From the NCBI GenBank assembly GCA_965637545.1, contig OZ281496.1, positions 5,084,001-5,148,000 of the forward strand: DNA of 64,000 nt, read 5' to 3'. Every line of letters begins with the position of its first letter. The first letter of the stretch is position 1. This DNA comes from Phallusia mammillata. Lineage: Eukaryota. A program made the position numbers and the translations under genes. Shown here one piece after another: positions 3,490-64,000 of the stretch. Below the pieces are notes generated by a model, which saw only the letters and a list, made by a program, of their open reading frames with translations, did not search any database and was not told the DNA's origin.

Positions 3490-6400
3490 TTTGTTTATAT
3501 TCTACTGTAGATCTTGGGCATTTTTGCCCATACGAGGGAACCGGCTCCGATAATTATAGCAGCCAGAAGAACAAACATCACAAGTTGGAAGATGTTGTAA
3601 GCGGCATCATTTACATCATTTATTCATCTCTGTCTCCTGGAGTGTCTGCGATAAAAAGAATGTTTAACTTAGATAAACATATATGTGTGCGAAAGCATTT
3701 GATACTGGAACTAGAGATTAACACCTCAGACAGACTAAAAATAATGCCACTCTTGTATACACTTGGAAGTGGGCCAAGCTTGCGAGAGATTGAAAGCCAA
3801 TACGAGAAGTAACTTTAAACTTTGATTCCTGGTTAAGGCAATGTCGAGTATGTTTCTTACACACAAAACAAAACGAAAAAGTGACTTTAGGAGTCAAGCT
3901 ATGCATAAGTTTGCCAAGATGGTCGAGTTGTAAGTAAAACCGACTTGTGTTCAATAGTTTGTGGGTTCTAATACTGTCTCGGCAGCCTGTGTTTCCCTGG
4001 GCAAGAAACTTAATTTGCATTGCTCCAACCCAGTGAAAATCCACGTATTGCACTACATTAACGTCCCCTCCGCTATAACGTAGTTGCTATAAATCTAGCA
4101 GCTCGACCGTGGACTGACTGTTAGTTAACGCATTCAGGCGTTGCAGGCTCATCGAGGATTAAAATAAATAGAAACATGCGAATTATTTGATAATTGAGGC
4201 CTAATATAGCTGAAGTAAACATGTCCCCAAAGGTTTTAGTTGATAAATACAACAATTTGAGTAGTTGGAACATAAGCAACTAAAGTATTTGGTCCAGAAC
4301 TAAGTTAATATGTAGGAAAGAAGAGTTTAATTATTGTCTTGGTACCTTGCACAAGCAAATACTTGGTAGTTTTCACGATACGAACTGGCCCCGCAGAAAG
4401 TCGTTGGCTGCGTCCATTGTTGTCAACAGATCGTCTTTTTTTCCCACCACACATCTTCAAATCAGTTTCATATTAATATTTTTTTTCATGTATATATATA
4501 TATACTATTAAGGATAAACAAAGCAGCTAAATGGAATCAGAAAAAACTTAGGCATGTAATGGTTTTTCCCTGTTTATTTCAACTAAAGCAAACTTATTGG
4601 AGAATAAATTAATCGAATATAATCCACTTTACTTGCAATGATGCAAGCAGCTCGACGGCGGACTTATTATTAGCCTTACACACCACACAAACTCAATTCA
4701 CCTGTCCAGGGCATTCTCCAGTCGAGTTTTGACAGACGGTCACGTCGCAGTGGATGTAGATGAACTGTTCTGCATCAGTAAAGTTTGTCCACACAAAGCT
4801 CTTCAGCTTGAAAGTTGCAGAGTTGGATTCGTAATTTCGTATCAACATTTTTGCGCCGGCAACCTCACTTCCACTGGGTGGCGCAACACATCTAATAATA
4901 TTTACAAACATTTACGCAAGGTCAAATGCAATGTGCCGTTCAATATATTATGAGAAAGATCACACGTTGCAAATCAAACACAAGTAATGATGTAAAGCTT
5001 ACCCGCTTACTACAACAGGGTAGTTCGGCAAACCACTGGAGTTTTCAACGCGTGTCGCCCAACATTCTTCAAGCTGTATACAAAATGGTAAATAAATCAA
5101 ATGTAGAAACTCTATAGCACCTAAAAGATGCTTAGTGTAATGCAACAAGTGTAATGTGCATTTTTTATGAAACACGAACTAACATTTAGCAACCTCTGTT
5201 ACCTTAATGCTTTTGTTTTTACCTGGACAATAAAGTCATCGTTGCTTGCAGAAATTTCATCAAGTTTCACTTCAGCAAAAATGTAGTTAGGCACAGTGAC
5301 TTCTCCGGGAAAGCTTTCGTTGAAGTATTGGTTGGAAAAGAGATTTAAAGCAACGTCAAAGTTTCCTGTATTCTCAGCAGAAGTTTCAATGGATCTGTAA
5401 CAAACTTCTACGTTTGAGAAATAAATGGACACGTTCCTGAGGAATTAGTCACATCAATAGACGTCATTTACTGTTTTTGACTTCACCGTTTATTTTCCGA
5501 GTTGTTTGACTAGCACTAATAATAGAATAAAAATTAATCAACAGACCGTTGGAGTCTCTGTGCCATGTTTGGCATGTGCTTACACATGCAATGACATGTG
5601 TCATGATTATAGTTTGCATTCTACGTGCTTTGCAGCATGTTACATCTGCTATTGCATTACATGACAAGTATTATGTATATGTTTTGCATATTGTGCGCTT
5701 TGTTGGCATGTGACATGTTTGGCATGTGCCGTAGATGTCTTCTTACCCGGCTTGTGATTGGACGTTGGATGACGAGAGAAGTAGTTCCGAGTCAAACAGA
5801 CAAGTGACATTGAGCCTGTTTTGAACGTCGCGTTGGATCACTGCTGGGGACGGAGCTAGGAATCTCCAGATAAGGAAGGACACCGACACTTTTCCGTTCT
5901 CATTCTGTTAATAAATAAATAAAAAATATTTTTAGAAGGGTAGCAAGAAAGTTGACAGCAATAAAAAGCACCAAAACTTAATCGTAACTGTAAAAGCATA
6001 TAGAGCCAATAAATGATAAGCTGCAGACAGTGCACACTGTTTCGACCTATAAGGTCTCATCAGTGCAGCTGGAGACGAGAGATCGGCCGCATTGGCTAGT
6101 GTAGCCATTCAACGGCACTCCAGTTCACCAGCTGCACTGATGAGACCTTATAGGTCGAAACAGTGTGCACTGTCTGCAGCTTAATCGTAACTACTGTGGA
6201 CGAAATGAATATGTGTCGATACATGGTGATGCCTGCCTGTATTTTTACTAAATGACATGTTGGGTGGAAGTGGCTCGATGAAGAAAACAGAAATGAGTTT
6301 TACCTGATAGAGGCCTTCGCATTGTCCAATGTCAAACACGAACACCGGGTCTGACCCCGTGACCTTGCAGTGGTCATTAAGTTGAGAAAGGGGAGTTTGC

Positions 6401-25639: not shown

Positions 25640-26636
25640 CTGCAAAGCAAAATACAAAACAGAACCTGTTAACTATATCTGACATTAAGAGAAACACACA
25701 AGCAAACGCAAGACAGACTCAGTTTACTTTACAAAGAATACTCGGTAGGGCTATTAATCAAAACAACAACAACACCTGTACCTTGGGCAATGTTACGTCA
25801 CAGAAAATCGGAAACGCAATTGTGCGCCATACAATATGATTGTTTTGTCATCAGCATACCAATACGGTTCAAGTCATTTGGGTTGCAACAGCGTAGGTTT
25901 GAAAAATGTACATTTTCGCTAAATTAAAAGAAAAGGATTTGCCAAAAACGCACCTTGAAAACATTAATCCGCTGAACACGTTAAATTCCGACAATATCCG
26001 GTTTAAAATAAGCATAAACCCAATCAGCGTTAAGTCCGAGTCTAAACACACAAAATCGTGTTGTAAGAGCTATTGCCGCTAGGCATGGTATTAAGTTTAT
26101 ATAGCTCTTCTGCTCTATAAACTTGACTCACATTCAATGTTATTTACCCTGATGAAGATGACCTATATAAGACGTCAAAACATCCGAATAAAAGTACATT
26201 TGCCAGAAGAGGTCCATAAACATAAAATCGTGTTGTTTATTGTATTAAAACATGCACTACAAAAATGCATTTTATTCGTAAATGGAAAGATTTATGGACG
26301 ACAGTGTAAATGTGTAAAAAAGTGAATGCAGTCACGTAACGCACATAATGCAACATACAAAAATAGTTTATTGCTATGTTTATCGTTAAAAAAATAAATT
26401 TTTCTAGTGGAATTTTCGATTGAAGTTAATGGTGTCTAATGTCATTTTCGAACAATGCGCAATATTGCCAAAATAACAAATAAAAAAGGAATTTAATTCC
26501 ATTTGCTCTACAATTTGTATTAAAGCTTTTGCAAGTGGCTTATGATACAAATAATTCCGCTAGTATCGCTAACCAATGTGAATATATGTGAAAATATTTG
26601 TGACGTACCTTTCTGCGCGATGTATTGTTTTCGCAG

Positions 26637-29600
26637 AAATACGATCCCACCACTGAGTGAAGGCTTTTGTCCCTATCATCGTGCTTTGAACAGATGTTGT
26701 AGTGTGTACAGGAGTACATCTGTAAGTCTGGGAGCAGATTAAAGTCAGAATTAACAACTGCATCAAGGCTGTTTACACATCATATGCAATCACTTATTCA
26801 TCGGCTGGATTGAAACGATTGCCAGCAACAATAAAGTTATCACTAAATATGCAGAATTACCCAAACTTTGTAAGTATTCTTTAAAATATGTCAGACAGTT
26901 TTTACAAAACCTTAAATTGATTGTTTCATAGGCTCTGACTAGTCCGTATCGTCGTGCTGATAACTTCATGGTGGTAAGTACATCTTCAAATATTATGTTA
27001 AATTGTTACCAGTTTATGAGCCTTAAATGCCAGAAAGGTAAAAAATAAACATACTTCTATTATTATTGGCGTTCATGTAAAACAGCAAACGGTGCTCATA
27101 GTGCGGTAGGCTTATAAAGGTTCGAAACAAACCGGCCTCTGAAGCATGACATAGGCTGAAACAAGCTGCCTTGACGTGGGATTCAAACCAACTATACGAG
27201 CTGTTGGGTCTCGCTATACAGGCCCAGTGGTGAGTTCGTAGAAAGTCGAAATGTAAGCACAGTTGCCTGCCTCGTATGCTGCACATTTCAGCTTTGTAGT
27301 AGGGAATTTTTCGAAAGGTTTGTTCGAAAATTGGTTTTGCAGACATTTGACTGTTAGCTTTATTATTTACGCTTAAGGCCTTGTGGATTGTACACACGCC
27401 AAGTTATTGACAGGTATTGCACTAAATTATTCCTTTTTTCAGCAGATCCCGTCTACCCCACAACAAATGTTCCTGCCTCAGCCGGTAAGAACGTATGGAA
27501 GTAATGAGGTATTTTTTGAAAATTGCGGGTACATAAGTAACTACACCGGAAGCACCTTATGTTTCTTCTATGAACCTAATAATGACTTCAAATCCAAATT
27601 GAACTGTAAAGCGTACATACTTAGAAAATACATTCTGGAAAAATCAAATCAATTGAGTCCAATGGATTGATACTTAAAAATTAAATTCGTTTAAACCTTG
27701 TGTAAAACTCAAAATAAATTATGTTAGTGGGCAAATAGCAGTCCGACAGAATTAAATTAACATTTTTTAATGCGTTTCAGGTTCCGTTTGTTTCACAACA
27801 ATATCTTCTGCCTCAGCCGGTAAGAACATGGAAACAGTTTATCCAAAAATTAATGCAAAAACTGTTTCCATTTTTACAAAAATGTTGAGTGTATTTTATT
27901 AATAGGTAATAACAGTCTGAATTACGGTGTTGCTTGTTAACGTTTTAAATAAGTTTCGATCGAAACAAATGCTGTCTTTCTCAAAAACTTGGTAACTTAC
28001 TTATTTTTGTTAGCATACAAGACAGTTCTTTTTTTAAAGTTTCAAATAGATAAGTGACGATGAAACACTTTGCACTACCAACTACTTCACCTGCATAGGC
28101 TAAGCGCATATTGATCATTTTGTGCAAAACATTTTTCACATTTGGTTTATTATATATTTGTAACACTTAGAGTGAAGAATATGAAGGCTTCCCGACCGAC
28201 AAAATTGGTCATTGAAAACAAAAGGCCCCATAATAAATAAACACTAATTTGGCGAGCGACTTTACCAAACTATTTTCTGTCATTCCTTTAATATTTTGAC
28301 AAACGTTTGGATTTAAAACATGTCTAAGGGAATATAAATTCATAACTGGGATCAGCCCTGAAGCGTCGATGCAGACCAGCGATCACGGCACACTCATATA
28401 TAAATCACAATTATGGGCTGATCCCAGTTATGAATTGATGTTCATCTTTAACTGATACTGGTCAATCTGGCGATCCCCTACTACGAAGCTGACATGTGCA
28501 GAATACGAGGCAGGCAACGGTGCTTGTGATTCGACTTTCGGCGGATTCTCCACTGAGCCTGCGTAGCTTAGTTGGTAGAGCGCGAGTCCCGGAAAGACTC
28601 CTGTCGTGGGTTCGAATCCAACCGCAGGCTAGATTTTTCCAGTCTACGCCTGATTTTCCAGTCTACGCCTGACCGGCTGATTCGGTATGACGCCTTTAAT
28701 GGGCCTGGCGTACTGTGATGTCTAAGGGATTGTCATTTTTGCAACGATGGCATATGGATAAAATGATAATGGAAATATAATTTTGACTTTGATTAGGAAA
28801 AGCATTCTGAAAGAGCTATCCGTACAAGTTTTTTCTCCTTTATGATTTTTAGCCGCAGTACAATCCTTTCCTTCAAGGCGGTCAGATAATGATGGTAAGT
28901 ATATTGTCAAGAAGAAAATATGTTAAAACTAAATGACGATAAATGTATTACTCCAAAGAATGTGAAAAGCAAATGAGCAATTTAGTTTTAAAGTTTCTCA
29001 ATCTTTGTTTGAAGTTCGTCTTTGCCGCTTTTCTATAGGAAATAAACACTATTTTAAATATTTTTTAATATGTAAAATTTTTTGCTGCCTTGGTTCTTGA
29101 AGAAACGAGTAACATAAATTATTTAGTTTAAATTTCTTTTAAACATTCAGCGGGTTGGCTCAATTCCTTAATTAAACGCTTTGCCTGTAAATAATTTGTA
29201 GGTCTCAAAATTATTCACACGTTGATTTTCAGGCACCGCCTGTTTTACCACAATATTTTCTGCCTCAAACGGTACGAAGGTTATTAAAAAAAGAATAATC
29301 ATTTTCTTATGGAGCGTGGTGATAAAAAGTTTTATAGTAGGAGATAATTCGAATTCATCCATTTTTTACAAACTTTTTTTAATCCGCTAAATCTTTTTGC
29401 CATTTTATTTTATTGCCTTAATGATATAAACTCGTTTTTGTTCAAGATTACTATCTAAACCAGTGGTTCTCAAACTTTTTATTGTCGGGGCCAAATGGCA
29501 TTTTTTAAGTGTGTAGGGTGCCGCAAACAACGAAACCTTGCAAAAAATTACTTTTTACTTTGAAAGCTAAAATAGCAATTTTTGGTGGTTTTCTGGGGTC

Positions 29601-31406
29601 TGGTGCGAGCCCCAAAATAAGTAGTTGGGAGCCGCATGAGGCCCCGAAAACCGAGTTTAAGAACCACTGATCTAAACAAACAAACCTATATCTTAGTATT
29701 GAACTGTGCATAAACCGTGGAAAATCGCATGTGCTTCTATTTTTTTTGCTCAGGGCACCAGTCTACCAACAAGTAATCCATACCATAGGGTAAGAATTTA
29801 CATGAAAAATCTTTGCATAAACGCCAAAAACTTAAAAAAACTTTATGTGAAATAAAGTTTTGTCTTGTTTTTATAGTTTAATTTTTGTTTAGCAAAAAGA
29901 AACTGAAGTAAAAAAATGTAACAAAATGTTTTGATATTTAGGTTTCAAGTAATGTCGAATGCGAAAAATATGAATACAACGTAAGATCACCAGCTCAATA
30001 CCAAGGTAAGGAAAAACGTATGTTTAAAGAACCAGGGAATTAGATTGATTTTAATGCAGGTTGCATAATGTTGAAACATATAATAATATTAATTCGTCAC
30101 ATTGTTTACTATACAATGCATTATAATGATTCTCATAAAAGTATCAAATATACATTAAATTTAAATTATACTCTTTACATGTTGTTTGAAATGATGTTAT
30201 TTGTAAATAATGATTTAATTCAATTTGTTTATTTCTGTAAAAGCATAAAACAAATATATGATAAAGATAGAATGTGTCCACTGACTGCAGCTTATTGTTT
30301 ATTATTGTTTCTCTATTTTGAATTTCACACAACGGCATTTTTGTTTTTTTGGGAAAGTGAAAACGGTTCCAAAAATTACGTATGGTGAAGATACTGGTGA
30401 TGAATCTGATGACAAGAAGAAGGTTATCGAATATCATCGGTCGGACGTGAGTGAATAGATAATATGCTTATGTATAGAGTTTGTAACACTTTTTGTGAAT
30501 AATCGGACAAAGAATTGCTTGTTTGTTTAAATGTAAGTACAGGGTGACTCAAACATGAAAAAGGGTTGTATAATTGTGGTGGTTTCAAACACAAATTGTA
30601 GATTAAACTAACGTTTATTCTATGTTATTGGATTGTTTGTTTGTGTTACAACTGTTTCGCTTTCGTTTCGTTTGTGAAACAGTTTGTGGTTTGTATTATT
30701 GTCTACCGTACTACGTCTCATATCTCAATGTAATGATTGACAAACCGGCGAAGTTTCAAATAGTTGTATCAATGCTATGCTGTTTAATTAAAAATGAAGT
30801 TCATTAAAAATTACGTAATTTACTTGATACAATTGATTATTAAACTATCAGTTGCGTTTTGCTTAATCTGCAACAAACACAAACAAAGACGCAGTTTAGT
30901 TTTTTTAACAAAAATTTTGTTTTGATTTTTACAGAGTCAGAGTAATGTCCAAAAAATTCCACCTGTGAAGGTAAAATGTAACAAAATTAAACTTATACCG
31001 TAAACATGAAACATTTTGTGGGTAGATGTTTTAACTAATGGCTGTGTTTCGCAAATAACATACGTATTTAAAAAGAATATGATGGTTAATATAGTTTGAA
31101 AAACAAACAATAACATTTGTTATTTACATGACATATAAATTAGGTTTCAGAAAAAGTGAAAATGGATCGACAAAATTTAAACCGACCACCTCAAAACCTG
31201 GGTAAGAAATTTCGAGTTTATAAATTTAACAAAACTTTTAACGTTGCCAAGCATTTGATGTTCTTTCAGCCCGAATTGCATTCGACAATTTTGACCCCAA
31301 CGGACAACCAGCAGAAGAATCAACACAAATAAATAGGAACAGGGATAGATTTCGTCACAACCTTTTGCAACGTAGCAGAAACGGGCGTTCTGCAAACTAT
31401 CGTTAA
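26637..31406 (+). CDS. Family-X gene copy 2 (5' end undefined): micro-exon-built Pro/Gln-rich region and terminal exon
   Basis: Phase-compatible GT-AG exons: 26637-26721 (least certain), 26932-26973, 27443-27484, 27781-27819, 28853-28894, 29233-29271, 29942-30005, 30391-30446, 30935-30970, 31144-31201, 31270-31406 (ARIAFDNFDPNGQPAEESTQ..YR*). Confidence 0.7.
27090..27310 (-). mobile_element. Old degenerate copy of the tRNA-like repeat
   Basis: gtgggattcaaacc, gttgcctgcctcgtatgctgcacat, ctttgtagtaggg. Confidence 0.65.
28332..28717. mobile_element. tRNA-like-containing permuted repeat with inverted end and 12-bp TSD
   Basis: TSD atgtctaaggga at 28320-28331 and 28718-28729. 28332-28410 is antisense to the terminus region; 28412-28717 is sense. 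Confidence 0.85.
28557..28630 (+). tRNA. tRNA-like cloverleaf inside the repeat (probably not a functional tRNA)
   Basis: Acceptor GCCTGCG/CGCAGGC; A box TAGCTTAGTTGGTAGAGC; anticodon-arm stem GAGTC/GACTC with loop CCGGAAA (no U33); B box GGTTCGAATCC; followed by T5. Confidence 0.7.
29461..29669. mobile_element. hAT-type MITE
   Basis: TIRs cagtggttctcaaact / agtttaagaaccactg; perfect 8-bp TSD atctaaac. Confidence 0.9.
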
Positions 31407-33400: not shown

Positions 33401-36400
33401 TTACTGGCAAAATTGTCTCGCATTGCGATCCTGGGTCAGTTTGCTCCATACGATGTAACCAGCTCCTATAATAATTACAGCCAGAAGAACAAACATCACA
33501 AGTTGGTAGCTGTTGCCAGCTCCTTTAAAAGCTTCGTTTCTTTCTCTTGTTGTATAATTGATAAAAAAAATCATGCTTAACAAAAACAAATGAGTAAAGA
33601 TTTGTTTATTTGTTGTTGTAGCCAACCATGAAACAGCCATGTGTTCGCCATACTCATGAAAATTATGGTATACGTCAAGATTGCAAGAAGCCATCGAATC
33701 AGTCTGGTTGTTAAAGCAACGGATACCAGAAAAAGAAAATAAGAGAAATAAGAGAATCCATGAAATACGTTTTAAGGTAACTGTTAGATTTATTTACCTT
33801 TTATATGTGTCCTGTAATGCAAACACAGTCTCATTATTGAAACAAGTTAAGGCGGTTAACAACGGAGCGATTGTTACCATTGAAGTTAATCACATATACA
33901 TCTACGTAAGTAACCACCAAAACGCAGTATATTAACTTGAGAAAAAAATCTTAAGTTATTATGCCCCAAAATTTTGAAAAGTGAAGTTATTATGACCCAA
34001 GCCGTGTGACTTGCTTGCTAGAACTACAAATTTCCTTAGCAGAAGCACGTGTATCAGCAATATAATCTAGAATAGAGATTAAATTTTTCTTCTTGTATTA
34101 CCAAGCAGGAAAGCGGTATCTTGAACAATGTGCACTGGCCCTGCAGAAAGCCGTTGATTGCGACCATTGTCTTCAACAGATCGCCGTTTCTTACCAGAAC
34201 AAGACTGCAAAAAAAATTACACTAATATTGATATTTAATGGAACACCAGTCTTATCAAAGGCGTCATACCGAATTAAGCCGATCACGGCTGCACGGCGTA
34301 TTTTCCGTGCTATTACTCTATCAGCTGAACCAAACAAGAGGGTTTAAATACTCTTTAGTTTGTATGTATGCTACGGACAGTAAACATCGTTATTTTCCAT
34401 GTGGTTCGGACCCAAGACGGGGGGATAGGTGCCGAATCCCGATGAAGTTTTTGTAGGTCTTTATGTAGGTCTGGCGCGCCGGACCATTCGGCCATTGTAC
34501 TGGTTTGCCATATAAAATCGCATGAGTGCAGCTTGTGACAGGAAATATACCGTACCTAGGACACTCCAGTTTGTTGTGTGCAACAGACTATTAGCCGCGC
34601 CTCACTAAAACTTTTCAATGAACGCCAAGAAAAAATCTTTAGTTTATCTAGACACATACTGTTTCGAGTTTTTGTGAGCAATACTCCGCAATTGTGTTCA
34701 GATAAAACAAATATCCTCGATCTTTCTATAGTTTTCGACGAACACTACTTTTATACATATATATATATATCACAAGTCCAAAATGCACTTAATTCAACTC
34801 ACCTGTCCAGGGCATTGTCCAGTTGAATTTTGACAGACGGTCACGTCGCAGTGGATGTAGATATATTGATCTGCGTCGGTAAAGTTTGTCCACACAAAGC
34901 TCATCACCTTGAAAGTTGCAAAGTTGGATCGGTAATTGCGCATCATCATCTTTGCGTCGGCAGTCTCGCCCCCACTGGGTGGCGCAACGCACCTAATAAT
35001 TTCAATGCTAAGTTACACAGAGTGAAATTGCGCAGGAACTTGGCCGAATGGTCCAGCTCGCCTGACCCATTTACAGCCATAAAAAGGCAGAGTGAAATTC
35101 AGATGGAAAATTAATCACTGAACAAACAAGCTCCCGACTAAGAAAATAATATGTTGAGGTTATGCAACTATATCTTACCCGCTTTGTACAATTTGGTAAC
35201 TAGGCAAACTATCGGAGTTTTCATTGCGTGTCGCCCAACAGGCTTCCAGCTGTGCAAAAAGATGTTCCACTTTAAGAGTATAAATTACAAACTAGACCAA
35301 AGATGCCAGAATAATGTATATTAAAACAAAGAATGCAATGTTTTCTTGCACTAAAAGCAGTTTGTTTTCATCACCTGGACAATAAAGTCATTGTTGTTTG
35401 TAGAAATCTCATCAAGTTTAAGTTTAGCAAAAATGTAGTTAGGTACAGTTACTTCTCTGGGCAAGCTTTCGGTATATAATTCGTTGCTAAAGAGATTTAG
35501 GACAACATCCAAAGTTCCTGTTTTCTTCGCCGAAATTTCTTCAGATCTACAATATTTAAAAATTTTCGGAAATAAAAATTGCAATCAATATGACAAATAG
35601 CTTACTATCTTTAACGCCCTGGTGTGTACGCGAGATTATCAAATACACGTTAACGCACTAGATTAATACCGTGCATTTTGTTCAGCAGCATTGGTAAATA
35701 CACTCTCCACATTATTATGGCCTTGTCTAAATAGAATTGTGCAATTTTAAACGGTTGGATAAATTGCCACCTGAAATGGCTACAATTAAGGTACCTGACA
35801 ACAACCGAATCATGCAAGGAGAAATAAACTGTGCTGCGTGTGATACACAGTGCGGCAAGTGCTGTTGAGTGTCTTGTGTCATCATGATGTATAATTATGC
35901 CTTATTTTTTTGTCAAATGTGTCATGCATGCCAGGTGTCTTGTGGCATGGGCAGATTGATGAGTTCTGTGTCGTGTGGAATGTGTACAGCTGTATGTCAT
36001 TCATGGTGTGGTTGGTTGGATGTTTTGTGACATGTGCAACATTTCTTTTTCCGTTTGTCAAATTGTTTTAAAGTGATGTCAACCAAAGACTGTGTAACGT
36101 ATTATCACGCCTACTGTGTGTTTTGTACATGTTGTCTTGTACCGAGTGCCACAGCTGTTATATAATTCATAGTACCCCGGGCCTATTCGAATCAGTTGGT
36201 ATCCCAAGCATTCCCACAAGGCAAGCCTCAGGTTAGAAAAATATAGCCTGCGGTGGGATTCGAACCAACGATAGGAGTCTTTTCTGTACTCGCGCTCTAC
36301 CAACTAAGCTACACAGGCTCAGTGGAGAAATCGCCAAAAGTCGAATCACAAGCACCATGCCTTGTATGCTGCACATGCCAGTTTCGTAGTAGGGGATCAC

Positions 36401-39400
36401 CAGTTCGACCGTATCAGATAAGATGAACATATTCATACTGGGATCAGCCCTGAAGCATCGATGCAGACCAGCGATCACGACATACATATCGATAAATCAT
36501 AGTACCTCAGGCCTATTAACGGTGTGTACCGAAACAGACGGGCACCAAGCATTCACATCAATATGGCAAGGCGTCAGCTAGAAAAAGCTAGCATGCGATG
36601 GGATTCGAACCCACGACAGGAGTCTTTTTTTCAGGCCTACGCCTTGCCGTGTGGTGGTGAATGCTTGGATGACCAGCTGATTCGGCACACGTCTTTAATA
36701 GAACTGGCATACTATCATTTATCGATATGTATGCCGTGATTGATGGTCCGACGCTTCAAGGCTGATCCCACTATAAATATGTTCATCTTAGTTGTTATAT
36801 AAATGTTTGTTTTTCGTCTCTTTACCCGATTTGTGTATAAATTTTGGATGACGAGATAAGAATTCCCGCGTCAAATAGACAAGTCACATTGAGCTTGTTT
36901 TGAACGTCGCGTTGGATCACGGCAAGGGATGGAGCTAGGTATCTCCAGATCAGGAAAGACACCGACAACATTCCGTTTTCATTCTGTACAAGAGCAGGAA
37001 AATTACATTATATTTCAAAATAGGCGGTCTTTCATTATGCAGCAAAACAAAGATTAAACACTTTATTATTATCCATAACTATACAATGTTTATTGGTTCT
37101 AATAGCTAATGTTTTCTAAAATATAATAAGGACATATTGTCTATGTATAAATCAGTATTGCTTATCCAGCAGTTTTATTGTAAACAATCAGTTTTATTGT
37201 ATTGTCTATGTGTTCAGAACAAAAATCCAACTTTACCTTAAAAGCACATTTGCATTGGCCAATGTCAAACGTAAACACTGGGTTTGACCCTTTGACCTTG
37301 CAGTTGTCATGGAGTTGAGAAAGGGGGGTTTCCCGGTCTAATGCGATGTAAAGTGTATCGCCGAATTCGTAATCTAATGTGTTCTGTTGATCAGCTGTTA
37401 CTCTGCGAATATTGGACTGTTAAGTTTTTGTACATTATAAAAGTCTAGACAACTTCCAAACATTTATACTATGTTGCTCTATTTATCGCGAAAACCGATT
37501 AGAACACCCATTGCAAACTGATAAGTAAAATGTCTGAATCAATAAAAAACTAAAAACAAGAGATTACAAGCCTATGGCAAAAACAGGCAGTGCACCAAAA
37601 TCCTTGAAATACTGTATTTTTTTAATAATCTTCTAGTTATTACAGACTTTCAAAAAATTAGCAATAATTTTCAAAAAGAATCAAAAAGAAAATATTAACT
37701 TACCTGATGGTCAAATTTTCAGTCCTACATTCAACAGATGGTATTCCTACACAAAAAGCATTTTTCAACCGTGATAATAAAGTTCGAGCACTATTCTAAT
37801 TTTTATGGATGAAAATTTACTTCTACATATTAAATTTGTTATTTCATTGCTTTTATTAAATTTGTTATTTCAAACATTTCATTGCTTTTATATTGTGACA
37901 ATAATTTAATGGATTTTATTTAGTAATTTTATTATATAAAATGTTTCAGCTTGGCATCAGCAAACTAACAAAACGATATAAGTTGGTAAGACCAAACCAA
38001 AAATAAGAACTTGATGTCAAAATAACCCGTCTTGAACTCAAATTTTTTAGTGCTATGTTATTGACAAAACAAATATTGAAATTACATTTTCAGACCACCC
38101 TTAACCTATAACTCATGCTGGCTGAGTTCGAGTGTGTTTTTATCATTTGCATGTCAAAATTTTGTGCCTGAAAGCAGATTTGCCTCACCTACTGTCGCAT
38201 TAAATCCTGGGAATTGCGTGTCACCGTCGCTCACAAACAAGACAGTGAGATATGTTGCTGTCACCGTGTAATCAAATGACCCAAGCGACCCAACAAATTT
38301 GTCCACATTACCTTCTTCGTTCTTGAACTGAAAACAATAGAGTATTTTTTATTTTCAGTATGTTCAGAAATGCTAACATTTAGCCGCAGGGGGCACACTT
38401 GTTGTCCTAAAAACGGTCGCATACCTCCTTAAGGCCGCAAGTTTCTCATCATTAAATTAGGCGCTTGTCAAAAATATGATTTCTACCACCTTAAGCAAAG
38501 TTATTGCTTTTTCAATATTAGAAGCAAACTTTTCCCCACTGGAAAATCAGTTTATAATAAATATGTTACTCAAAAATTCATTAAAAAAACAAACTTAAAC
38601 ATGTATTAATTTCAAGCGTATTGCGGAAAATTTCGTAAAAATAACATACCGTTTCCATTCGATTATTTGCGTCGACAATATCTCCCGGAATTTTAGGTGT
38701 ATATTAGTTAAGACACTTACGTATAAAAAGTCGCAGCAGGTCTCAGTGTAAAATGTGGAGAATTGGAACACCAAGGTTCTGCTGCTATTCATTTGAAATC
38801 TCCAAACACAACCAGCATCGTTGGGGTAGTAACTAGGAAACATTGGAGAGAGTAAATTGTACGGTATATCAGCAACATCTTCCCCGCACGAAGTAACTAT
38901 AAAACACAAAAAGATTAGCTTGAGACAGTGCAACTAGTAAGAATAGTTCCAAAAAGTTGTTTTGACCATCGAGTTGTCAATTTTGTGTGGCTTATATCTA
39001 GTTGTCGATCCGATAACCAGTGGAATATCACCACTGTTTAAGAAGTGCTTATAAACTACGCTTTTATTGTACATCAAACAATTGTTTGCAAATTATACTT
39101 TTATTCAATTAGTTGTTTCTTTTGTTTGCAAAATAATAGATTTGACATCATTTTGTTGATACCGAACCGAAAACATGTTTCTTTCGCATGCTTTAAGTTT
39201 CGGTTATAAAGGAATCGTAAACCTGACTTACATGAACTTATGCGAAACGACACAGATTCCGTTGTGAGGTTTGTGACACAAGATATATAAGCAGATGAGC
39301 TTTCAACGATAACCGGAAAAGATAAGCTTCCACCTTCCAACGTTCCAGCCAATTTACCTTGTTTGTCGGATCCCTCGTAAATCTAGATTTTTCTATTTAC

Positions 39401-62658: not shown

Positions 62659-63167
62659 TCACATGATGCCAGGCCCATTGAAGGCGCCATACCGAATCAG
62701 CCGGTCACCAAGCATTCACCACCATATGGCAAGGCGCAGACTGGAAAAAACTAGCCTGCGATGGGATTCGAACCCACGACAGGAGTCTTTCCGGGACTCG
62801 CGTTCTACCGACTGAGCTACACAGGCTCAGTGCAGAATCCGCCGAAAGTCAAATCACAAACACCGTTGCCTGCCTTGTATGCTGCACATGTCAGCTTCGT
62901 AGTAGGGGATCGCAAGATTGACCAGTATCAGTAAAGATGAACATAAATTCATAACTGACCCTACTACGAAGCTGTTCGAATTCCATCGCAGGCTAGATTT
63001 TTCTAGCCTGCGCCTTGCCATATGATGGTGAATGCTTGGTGACCGGCTGATTCGGTATAGCGCCTTCACTGGGCCTGGTGTACTGTGATTTATATTTGAG
63101 TATGCCGTGATCGCTGGTCTGCATAGACGCTTCAGGGCTGATCCCAGTTATGAATTTATGTTCATCT
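62659..63167. mobile_element. tRNA-like repeat (cloverleaf 62754-62826, minus strand) with inverted terminal segment and 13-bp TSD
   Basis: TSD tatccaagagcaa/tatcccagagcaa at 62646-62658 and 63168-63180; ends ...atgttcatctt as in the 36166 copy. Confidence 0.88.
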
Positions 63168-64000
63168 TATCCCAGAGCAAGGGACTTAAACCCTTTTAGC
63201 GAAATCGAAAGCGCTAGTCGCCAATTGGAAGTGTGAAAGCAAAACAAGTTTAATGGAAAACTCCTTACCCTTTTATTTAAAAGATATATCCCGTCACATA
63301 CATAGGCTTAAAAAGTGGCCTCAGTGGCAAATTAAATGCCCAACCTTGCTCTCGAGATCAATAAATACAAACAATCGCCAGCAAATGCAATGCATACAAA
63401 TGGTAGCATGTAAACAGATGCACTTCTTGTCCCTAGAGTTTGTTTGCAATGCAAATAAAATATGTTGTAAATTAAAGTTAGCATCTAACACATTTGGTAC
63501 ATATTTATACAATCAATGTTGAAATCGTGCCCCTTTTAAACTTAAATCACACTCCACATCCAAAAAATTGTTACCATTGGGGGATCAAAACGCTCTCTTG
63601 CAGTCCCCTGTCCTACAGTGATCCGGATAGATTGCCTTTTATATTTTGCTCTCTTCGATAGTGGTGCAATCGTGTATCTGTCCATAGGTAGCATAAATAT
63701 GTAACTTACCGTACGGTGAGAGCTGAATGAATTTGGCGTAAATGAATTTCTGGTAATGTATTTAAATATACGCTTGTAGTACTTTAGCGATTTTCAATTG
63801 CTCAGTTGTGTGACAAGATATAAAGTTCTGATTTAATCCACTATTTGCGTGGTAATAAATTAAACCTTGCATTACAATTTAAATACCTTCGTTTTATCTC
63901 CTGGTTATTACAGAAATACGAATACGGCACTTGAAATATGTTGCACGAAACAATATTGTCAAAAATTGTCATTACTTCTGAGCTGTTGCGTCACAAAAGA

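What the first reader, a model, noticed from the sequence alone, without database searches (positions are those of the whole stretch)
28320..28729. Circularly permuted ~350-400 bp repeat with an internal tRNA-like cloverleaf (not a conventional SINE)
Seen: the tRNA-like unit lies ~110 nt downstream of the recurrent terminus (..gggctgatcccagttatgaatttatgttcatctt), not at a 5' end, and is followed by T5, a possible Pol III terminator. Sequence continues past the terminus into the start of the monomer. At least six copies occur in 64 kb. The terminus has two hairpins (ggg-ctgat-ccc; atgaa-tttatg-ttcat). Inference: a circular or multimeric RNA intermediate in which the cloverleaf acts as promoter or as an RNase P/Z processing signal, playing the role HHRs play in retrozymes.
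Basis: partly seen in the sequence, partly recalled or inferred. Interest (0 to 1): 0.78.

Follow-up and report, generated by a model that had tools for sequence, protein, structure and literature searches.

The report
Penelope-style retroposon carrying tRNA-like gene
This is one copy of a young, very abundant 355-base non-coding jumping element of a sea-squirt genome. It carries a tRNA-like gene in its middle, and its insertion scars match the unusual way Penelope-like retrotransposons copy RNA into DNA, so it is a new variant of a known kind and shows no sign of being an RNA circle.

Summary
Window 28332-28717 is one insertion flanked by a 12-bp target-site duplication. It belongs to a 355-bp repeat with thousands of genomic matches, a well-formed tRNA-like cloverleaf (unit 193-266) and a T5 run just after it.

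Copies end at one of two fixed sites: A (..GTACTGTGAT) or B (..CATCTTAA, 81 nt further on). They have variable 5' ends, target-site duplications that are mostly 13 bp, partial tandem units inside one duplication pair, and often a second, inverted arm.

In two-armed copies one outer end is A and the other is B (12 of 13 unbiased cases). This is the published footprint of Penelope-like elements (PLEs): reverse transcription starting inside a multimeric RNA at two nearby sites, priming on both DNA strands, and a "tail" on one side only. The genome holds many intact PLE genes.

No ribozyme was found, and copy ends show no excess at the cloverleaf borders. Nothing tested bears on an RNA circle. No autonomous partner with matching sequence was found.

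"Circular RNA" and "cloverleaf replaces the hammerhead" are not supported.

Earlier follow-ups of this scan reached the same reading on other windows of this genome.

The parts
28320..28331 (.). Left copy of the 12-bp target-site duplication (ATGTCTAAGGGA)
   Evidence: Identical 12-mer at 28718-28729. The duplication is kept in the segmental copies L002-L010.
28332..28409 (-). Inverted arm: reverse complement of unit 1 to about 78-80. Its outer end lies near terminus B, 7-9 nt short of it.
   Evidence: BLAST to the family consensus, 98% identity. Boundary read.
28410..28414 (.). 5-nt filler (attat) between the two arms
   Evidence: Not alignable to the unit.
28415..28717 (+). Direct arm: unit 52-355 plus TGTG(AT), ending at terminus A
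   Evidence: BLAST to consensus, 91% identity. This is a subfamily with a changed stretch at about unit 276-312.
28415..28450 (+). Site B region, internal in this arm: the two small hairpins and ..catcttt/aa
   Evidence: In other copies the same place is a fixed 3' end (unit 87).
28556..28631 (+). tRNA-like cloverleaf with A box (tagcttagttgg) and B box (ggttcgaatcc). The anticodon loop CCGGAAA has C where tRNAs have U33, and there is a short variable loop despite the 'Ser' anticodon.
   Evidence: ARAGORN. Rfam tRNA 47.9 bits here and 55.3 bits in a consensus-like copy.
28634..28638 (+). T5 run, a possible Pol III terminator. In the family consensus it is the loop of a 6-bp hairpin GGCTAG/CTAGCC.
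   Evidence: In one copy elsewhere (L063) an inverted arm ends exactly at this T5.
28718..28729 (.). Right copy of the target-site duplication
36165..36791 (-). Older two-armed copy of the same family (about 78-85% identity). One arm is 1.3 tandem units ending at A, the other an inverted arm ending at B. 9-bp duplication TGTTATATA.
62668..63169 (-). Young two-armed copy: arm unit 62-351 towards A, arm unit 246-355 plus 1-86 ending at B
   Evidence: tRNA-like at 62752-62827.

Best explanation
The finding is one insertion of a non-autonomous retroposon with a 355-bp unit, most likely copied into DNA by the reverse transcriptase/GIY-YIG endonuclease of a Penelope-like element (PLE).

Inferred steps:
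- Genomic copies that hold more than one unit are transcribed into RNA that spans unit junctions.
- The PLE enzyme makes a staggered break, usually 13 bp apart.
- It starts DNA synthesis inside the RNA at one of two fixed sites: A (after ..GTACTGTGAT, unit 6) or B (after ..CATCTTAA, unit 87).
- When both broken DNA ends prime, one uses A and the other uses B. The insert then has two head-to-head arms, with the 81-nt A-B 'tail' on one side only.
- In the window copy the B-primed arm copied only the tail (unit 1 to about 78). The A-primed arm copied unit 52-355 of the stretch just upstream on the same RNA.

The tRNA-like cloverleaf with its T5 is a self-contained Pol III unit carried in the middle. 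It probably gives a short tRNA-like RNA, and it may help to keep source copies active. It does not set the ends of the template.

What is shown and what is inferred:
- Shown: the anatomy, the termini, the duplications, the A/B pairing, the lack of a ribozyme, and the presence of PLE genes.
- Inferred: that a PLE enzyme does the copying, which polymerase makes the long RNA, and what the cloverleaf does.
For: 1. Retroposition scars. Target-site duplications flank copies, with a mode of 13 bp (15 of 26). The 3' ends are fixed and the 5' ends vary.
2. Two alternative 3' termini 81 nt apart. Among one-armed copies, 9 end at A and 6 at B. This parallels the two adjacent internal start sites and the 'tail' of PLEs (PMC11167929; PMC8557442).
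3. Partial tandems inside one duplication pair, for example unit 188-355 + 1-355 + 1-87 in L020 and 165-355 + 1-361 in L065.
4. Inverted 5'-truncated arms. The outer ends are A on one side and B on the other in 17 of 18 young copies, or 12 of 13 after dropping five copies that the query may have favoured (P = 0.001). The older window copy at 36165-36791 fits as well.
5. A true PLE family of this genome shows the same habit, with a 39-nt tail present in L034 and L035 and absent in L032, L033 and L037.
6. The enzymes are at hand. There are more than 150 PLE reverse-transcriptase matches, uninterrupted RT + C-terminal GIY-YIG reading frames of 905 and 979 aa, and 3.3-kb tandem arrays.
7. The family is young. 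Many copies are 98-100% identical to the consensus.
Against: - No autonomous partner was found. The unit shares no detectable sequence with 19 PLE loci from several families.
- The tail is 81 nt, about twice the published 30-40 bp.
- There is no hammerhead, which canonical EN+ PLEs and animal retrozymes carry.
- The sample of copies is small (about 37 independent insertions) and was partly picked by likeness to the query.
- One A/A copy (L028) and three copies with other outer ends (L013, L056, L063) exist.
- No RNA data show the template. Only contigs of runs guessed to be RNA could be laid.
Confidence: 0.7

Rival explanations
1. Multimeric transcripts are cut at the cloverleaf by RNase P and RNase Z in place of a hammerhead, the monomer is circularised, and rolling-circle reverse transcription gives copies longer than one unit.
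For: Copies longer than one unit lie inside one duplication pair. Two copies are one full turn plus a few repeated bases (L019, L029). The cloverleaf is intact in the consensus of a young family. Hammerhead retrozyme-like elements exist in the same genome (earlier notes).
Against: The 5' ends of arms show no excess at the RNase P site or at the RNase Z site/T5 (2 of 53 each, about 2 expected). The fixed 3' ends are at A and B, not at the cloverleaf. From established knowledge of these enzymes, RNase P and Z leave 5'-phosphate and 3'-OH ends, which are not the substrates of the RtcB ligase that closes hammerhead products. Linear multimeric RNA with internal initiation explains the same copies (PMC11167929). 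Contigs gave no circle-specific signal, and they could not have done so, because tandem DNA copies give the same joints.
Confidence: 0.1
2. An ordinary tRNA-derived SINE mobilised by a LINE, with twin priming and template jumps giving the inversions and tandems.
For: Target-site duplications, 5' truncation, Pol III A and B boxes, and inversions resembling L1 twin priming.
Against: The tRNA part is internal and is followed at once by T5. There is no poly(A) or simple-repeat tail. There are two fixed termini, and the outer end of the inverted arm is always a fixed terminus rather than a random internal site. The strict A/B pairing and one-sided tail are described as not seen in LINE insertions (PMC8557442).
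Confidence: 0.12
3. A DNA-level element: a MITE or foldback transposon, a Helitron, or a satellite spread by segmental duplication.
For: Inverted arms look like terminal inverted repeats in single copies. Arrays of 3 units exist. The window copy sits in a segment duplicated at least 10 times.
Against: Arm lengths and inner junctions differ in every copy, while the outer ends are A or B, not matching inverted repeats. One-armed copies have no inverted repeat. Duplications of 8-14 bp of varying sequence rule out Helitrons, which make none. Copies are scattered over at least six large contigs in unrelated flanks.
Confidence: 0.03

Closest known systems
Non-autonomous derivatives of Penelope-like elements: animal 'non-LTR retrozymes' (bioRxiv 10.64898/2026.07.22.740005) and non-autonomous Chlamys elements such as MRC1 (PMC8557442)
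   Same: Short non-coding units; head-to-tail partial tandems; dispersed copies with target-site duplications; dependence on a PLE enzyme inferred from insertion structure; co-occurrence with PLEs in the genome.
   Different: Retrozymes are defined by a hammerhead ribozyme and resemble PLE pseudo-LTRs in sequence. This unit has no ribozyme match and no likeness to the PLE loci read. It carries a complete tRNA-like Pol III unit instead.
Sm-alpha / Sj-alpha SINE-like elements of schistosomes (Ferbeyre et al. 1998 and Laha et al. 2000, as reviewed in PMC6765202)
   Same: A unit of about 330-350 bp; both tandem and dispersed; Pol III promoter boxes inside the unit, so that a single copy cannot transcribe its whole self and tandems are needed; multimeric transcripts.
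   Different: Sm-alpha carries an active hammerhead that cuts multimers into monomers. Here there is no ribozyme, the tRNA-like part is a full cloverleaf with its own T5, and the copy ends are set by two reverse-transcription start sites.
Autonomous Penelope-like elements (Penelope/Poseidon, Neptune; PMC11167929, PMC8557442)
   Same: Pseudo-LTR-like partial tandems; an adjacent inverted 5'-truncated copy; an optional tail on one end; AT-rich targets. The same features are seen in a true PLE family of this genome.
   Different: No reading frame; 355-bp unit; 81-nt tail instead of 30-40 bp; no hammerhead.
Canonical tRNA-derived SINEs
   Same: tRNA-derived A and B boxes; retroposition with target-site duplications; high copy number.
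   Different: In a SINE the tRNA head is at the 5' end and the 3' tail mimics a LINE or is poly(A). Here the cloverleaf is at unit 193-266 of 355, is followed by T5, and the ends are elsewhere.
Helenus (tRNA-derived sequence inside the LTRs of non-autonomous LTR retrotransposons; PMC10886601)
   Same: A small-RNA gene module carried inside the repeated terminal part of a non-SINE, non-autonomous retroelement.
   Different: Helenus is an LTR element moved by integrase-bearing retrotransposons, with a different class of enzyme and different scars.

Membership tests
PLE-dependent non-autonomous retroposon | Partial head-to-tail tandems (pseudo-LTR structure) made in one insertion event | tested here: met
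   Arms spanning 1.1-2.5 units inside single duplication pairs (L020, L039, L063, L065, L066 and others).
PLE-dependent non-autonomous retroposon | An adjacent inverted 5'-truncated copy | tested here: met
   About half of the 37 independent young insertions are two-armed, including all three larger window copies.
PLE-dependent non-autonomous retroposon | Two alternative 3' termini, with the 'tail' between them present on one end only | tested here: met
   Termini A and B are 81 nt apart. 17 A/B, 1 A/A, 0 B/B; 12 of 13 in the less biased set, P = 0.001. The tail is longer than the published 30-40 bp.
PLE-dependent non-autonomous retroposon | Sequence likeness to an autonomous PLE of the same genome (pseudo-LTR or 3' end) | tested here: inconclusive
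   None to 19 PLE loci. More than 130 further PLE places could not be read.
PLE-dependent non-autonomous retroposon | Potentially active PLE enzymes in the genome | tested here: met
   Uninterrupted RT + GIY-YIG frames of 905 and 979 aa and many more long frames.
Animal non-LTR retrozyme | Hammerhead ribozyme in each unit | tested here: not met
   Rfam at E up to 10 on a two-unit copy, both strands, gave only tRNA. The same search finds hammerheads at window 6034-6166.
Animal non-LTR retrozyme | Circular RNA of unit length | not testable with these tools
   Only contigs of runs guessed to be RNA were available. They cannot show ends or circles.
Canonical tRNA-derived SINE | tRNA-derived head at the 5' end of full-length copies | tested here: not met
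   The cloverleaf is at unit 193-266. Only 2 of 53 arm 5' ends lie at 183-196, with 2 expected.
Canonical tRNA-derived SINE | Poly(A), simple-repeat or LINE-derived 3' tail | tested here: not met
   Copies end at ..GTACTGTGAT or ..CATCTTAA directly against the duplication. LINE libraries could not be searched.
Canonical tRNA-derived SINE | Pol III A and B boxes | tested here: met
   TAGCTCAGTTGG at unit 200-211 and GGTTCGAATCC at unit 245-255.
Helitron | No target-site duplication; 5' TC and 3' hairpin + CTRR ends | tested here: not met
   Duplications of 8-14 bp; ends do not fit.
MITE / foldback DNA transposon | Matching terminal inverted repeats and a fixed-length duplication | tested here: not met
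   One-armed copies have no inverted repeat. The arms of two-armed copies end at different unit positions (A against B) and have variable inner ends.

The most novel reading that the evidence does not exclude
In this lineage a tRNA-like cloverleaf has taken the place of the hammerhead in a PLE-dependent, retrozyme-like element. Host RNase P and RNase Z (or Pol III start and T5 stop) would then process or mark the multimeric RNA, possibly yielding a unit-length or circular RNA, so that a host tRNA-processing pathway, not a ribozyme, serves a retroelement's life cycle.
Probability: 0.12. Interest if true: 0.8.

Novelty: new variant of a known kind. Interest (0 to 1): 0.5.

Why it matters
PLEs are the least understood class of retrotransposons. 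Their internal, two-site start of reverse transcription and their priming on both strands were shown in vitro only in 2024, for one lizard element.

This family gives thousands of young, short, easily aligned insertions that record the same events in vivo. The two start sites are far enough apart (81 nt) to be told apart in every copy. The near-strict rule 'one end A, the other end B' suggests that the two DNA ends of one break are served by two different sites of one RNA, which is a testable point of mechanism.

The family also shows that a PLE passenger need not carry a hammerhead and can instead carry a Pol III tRNA-like unit. That widens what repeat annotators should file under PLE-dependent elements, so that such copies are not mislabelled as SINE, MITE or satellite.

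Tried and rejected
- Partner search. I compared the unit with 7 GIY-YIG loci and 12 PLE reverse-transcriptase loci by sensitive BLAST. There was no match apart from chance hits of the T arm to true tRNA genes beside one PLE. Further loci could not be fetched.
- The isolated piece of unit 109-203 at window 27213-27307. It is only an old fragment inside the local segmental duplication, not a shared module of another element.
- A contig 'loose end' with another tRNA-like 5' half. It comes from a single-copy locus, not from a sister family.
- RNA evidence. Contigs of four runs guessed to be RNA hold pieces of the family with many different flanks and opposite-strand joints like those of the DNA copies. 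They give nothing on ends, strand or circles.
- Structure. The hairpins and the whole unit fold no better than shuffles.
- A cluster of arm 5' ends at unit 1-60 (P = 3e-7 in the full sample). It vanished in the loci fetched with the tRNA segment alone (4 of 22, 3.7 expected), so I attribute it mostly to how the first query picked copies.
- A weaker cluster at unit 36-48, about 30 nt after a TATATAT motif. It stays suggestive only (3 of 22, P = 0.045).
- Literature searches for a tRNA-bearing PLE passenger or an ascidian SINE of this kind found none in the held library.
- Dfam and Repbase could not be searched.

Full report
**What is at the coordinates**

Window 28320-28729 is exactly one insertion with its target-site duplication (TSD). 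ATGTCTAAGGGA stands at 28320-28331 and again at 28718-28729.

Between the two copies lie, in order:
- an inverted arm (28332-28409, reverse complement of unit 1 to about 78);
- five filler bases;
- a direct arm (28415-28717, unit 52-355 plus the first bases of the next unit).

The direct arm holds the cloverleaf that ARAGORN and Rfam both call (28556-28631; 47.9 bits). The cloverleaf has intact A and B boxes. Its anticodon loop has C where tRNAs have U33. A T5 run follows three bases after its end. The cloverleaf starts 108 nt after the ..gttcatctt motif.

The copy lies in a segment of at least 3.4 kb that is repeated about ten times on the same chromosome at 90-93% identity. The insertion is therefore older than those duplications.

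**The family**

A search of the window's own genome (240 Mb) gave 4405 first-look candidates with the whole element as query. It gave 2263-2488 with 76-97-nt pieces. Earlier notes of this scan call the genome a sea squirt, which I did not test.

Sixteen full copies gave a 355-bp monomer. Most copies fetched are 97-100% identical to it.

On the monomer:
- the cloverleaf is unit 193-266;
- the T5 is unit 270-274, in the loop of a GGCTAG/CTAGCC hairpin;

Rfam at E up to 10, on both strands of a two-unit copy, finds only tRNA (55.3 bits) and no ribozyme of any family. As a control, the same kind of search picks up two hammerhead motifs at window 6034-6166 at E about 1e-3. Neither the terminus region nor the whole unit folds better than dinucleotide shuffles (z = 0.18 and -1.27).

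**Insertion scars**

I read about 37 independent young insertions from the window and from 60 loci.

1. Target-site duplications. They are of unrelated, AT-rich sequence. They are 13 bp long in 15 of 26 measured cases, with a range of 8-14 bp.
2. Two fixed outer ends. Every arm ends at one of two places:
   - A, after ..GGCGTACTGTGAT (unit 355 plus 6);
   - B, after ..TTCATCTTAA (unit 87).

   Among one-armed copies 9 end at A and 6 at B.
3. Variable inner ends. The inner (5') ends of arms vary widely.
4. Arms longer than one unit. Examples are 188-355 + 1-355 + 1-87 (L020, 13-bp duplication) and 165-355 + 1-361 (L065, 14-bp duplication). Genomic arrays of three units with a 355-bp period also exist.
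5. Two-armed copies. About half of the insertions carry a second, inverted arm. One outer end is A and the other B in 17 of 18 young copies. L028 is A/A and none is B/B.

The first query was itself a B/A copy and may have favoured look-alikes. I therefore dropped five such copies. That leaves 12 of 13 A/B, P = 0.001 against independent choice. The loci fetched with the tRNA segment alone give 6 of 6. The old window copy at 36165-36791, once its diverged left end is read by eye, is also A/B, with a 9-bp duplication.

In ten of these copies the B arm is confined to the 81 nt between A and B, while the A arm covers the stretch just upstream. The two arms together therefore read as one RNA 'broken' at A.

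Three copies have other outer ends. One of them (L063, 14-bp duplication) has an arm ending exactly at the T5, as if an RNA terminated there had been copied from its 3' end.

**Comparison with published mechanisms**

The combination seen here is the described structure of Penelope-like element insertions:
- partial tandems;
- an adjacent inverted 5'-truncated copy;
- an extension present at one end only.

It is stated not to be seen in LINE insertions (PMC8557442).

The 2024 in vitro study of a lizard PLE explains this structure. The enzyme cuts and extends both DNA strands. It starts reverse transcription inside a multi-copy RNA at two adjacent sites without homology to the target. The 30-40-bp tail is the stretch between those sites. 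Hammerhead cleavage is not needed (PMC11167929).

Here the two sites are 81 nt apart.

The same genome has:
- more than 150 PLE reverse-transcriptase matches;
- uninterrupted RT + C-terminal GIY-YIG frames of 905 and 979 aa;
- 3.3-kb tandem arrays;
- a coding PLE family with a hammerhead motif whose copies end with or without a 39-nt tail.

I therefore take the element to be a PLE passenger (confidence 0.7).

The weak point is that I found no PLE sharing sequence with it.

A template longer than a monomer is supported. A circle is not needed and is not shown.

If RNase P and RNase Z, or Pol III start and stop, defined the template, arm ends should pile up at unit 183-196 or 264-277. They do not: 2 of 53 at each, with about 2 expected. 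In the unbiased subset it is 1 of 22 at each.

The T5 directly after the cloverleaf argues that Pol III starting at the cloverleaf makes only a short tRNA-like RNA. The long template must then come from another promoter or from read-through.

There is a weak hint of such a promoter. Arm 5' ends at unit 36-48 number 3 of 22 in the unbiased set (P = 0.045), about 30 nt after a TATATAT motif at unit 8-14.

Contigs of four runs guessed to be RNA contain pieces of the family joined to many different flanks. That fits co-transcription with neighbours, but says nothing on ends, strand or circles.

**Novelty**

Known relatives in kind are:
- animal non-LTR retrozymes, now argued to be PLE derivatives (bioRxiv 10.64898/2026.07.22.740005);
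- non-autonomous Chlamys elements;
- the schistosome Sm-alpha SINE-like repeats, which combine Pol III boxes, tandem units and a hammerhead (PMC6765202).

Helenus elements show that tRNA-derived modules also ride in LTR elements (PMC10886601).

I found no paper in the held library on a PLE-style passenger with a complete tRNA-like unit and no ribozyme. Dfam and Repbase could not be searched. It is a new variant of a known kind.

Earlier follow-ups of this scan reached the same reading on other windows of this genome. This report adds:
- the exact sites A and B;
- the 81-nt tail;
- the 13-bp duplication mode;
- the A/B pairing statistics with their bias control;
- the negative test of the cloverleaf borders;
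- the failed partner search.

Noticed in passing
window 26440-30607: The segment around the finding is repeated about ten times on the same chromosome (C3, 2.96-5.11 Mb) at 90-93% identity, carrying the insertion and its duplication with it. It is a local segmental or tandem gene-cluster duplication of unknown content.
   Followed up: partly
window 6034-6166: Two sub-threshold hammerhead (type III model) matches on opposite strands (26.8 and 25.5 bits, E about 1e-3). This is the inverted hammerhead pair noted by another reader. It shows that hammerhead-bearing small elements coexist with the tRNA-bearing one.
   Followed up: partly
L034:2093-2132 and L035:2092-2131: A coding PLE family (GIY-YIG frame; hammerhead-like motif ctgaagaagtcc..ggacgaaacgtc about 100 bp before its end) has copies that end at ..ttattaaata. 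Other copies run on for a shared 39-nt tail.
   Followed up: partly
G000:C8:5587356-5601125 (not fetched): At least five PLE reverse-transcriptase matches spaced exactly 3300 bp apart, each in a 942-aa open frame. This is a tandem PLE array.
   Followed up: no
L036:2532-3099: A cluster of true tRNA genes (Leu-TAG, Met-CAT, Leu-AAG) lies 700 bp downstream of a PLE GIY-YIG frame. This explains the only BLAST hits between the repeat and a PLE locus (shared T arm).
   Followed up: yes
L040:1425-2106; repeat unit 161-166: The unit has a second TGTGAT at 161-166, identical to the motif at site A. In L040 the sequence jumps from one to the other (314-355 joined to 164-355). Two more copies (L065, L066) begin at 165-166. 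It is a likely template-switch or start hotspot.
   Followed up: partly
L060:2860-2995: A mini copy made of reverse complement of unit 6-45 joined to unit 6-82, with a run of A at the junction and no clear duplication.
   Followed up: no
repeat unit 8-14 (for example window 28396-28402, minus strand): A TATATAT motif lies just after site A. Seven arms begin 36-48 nt into the unit, about 30 nt downstream of it. It may be the element's own promoter, but the statistics are weak.
   Followed up: partly
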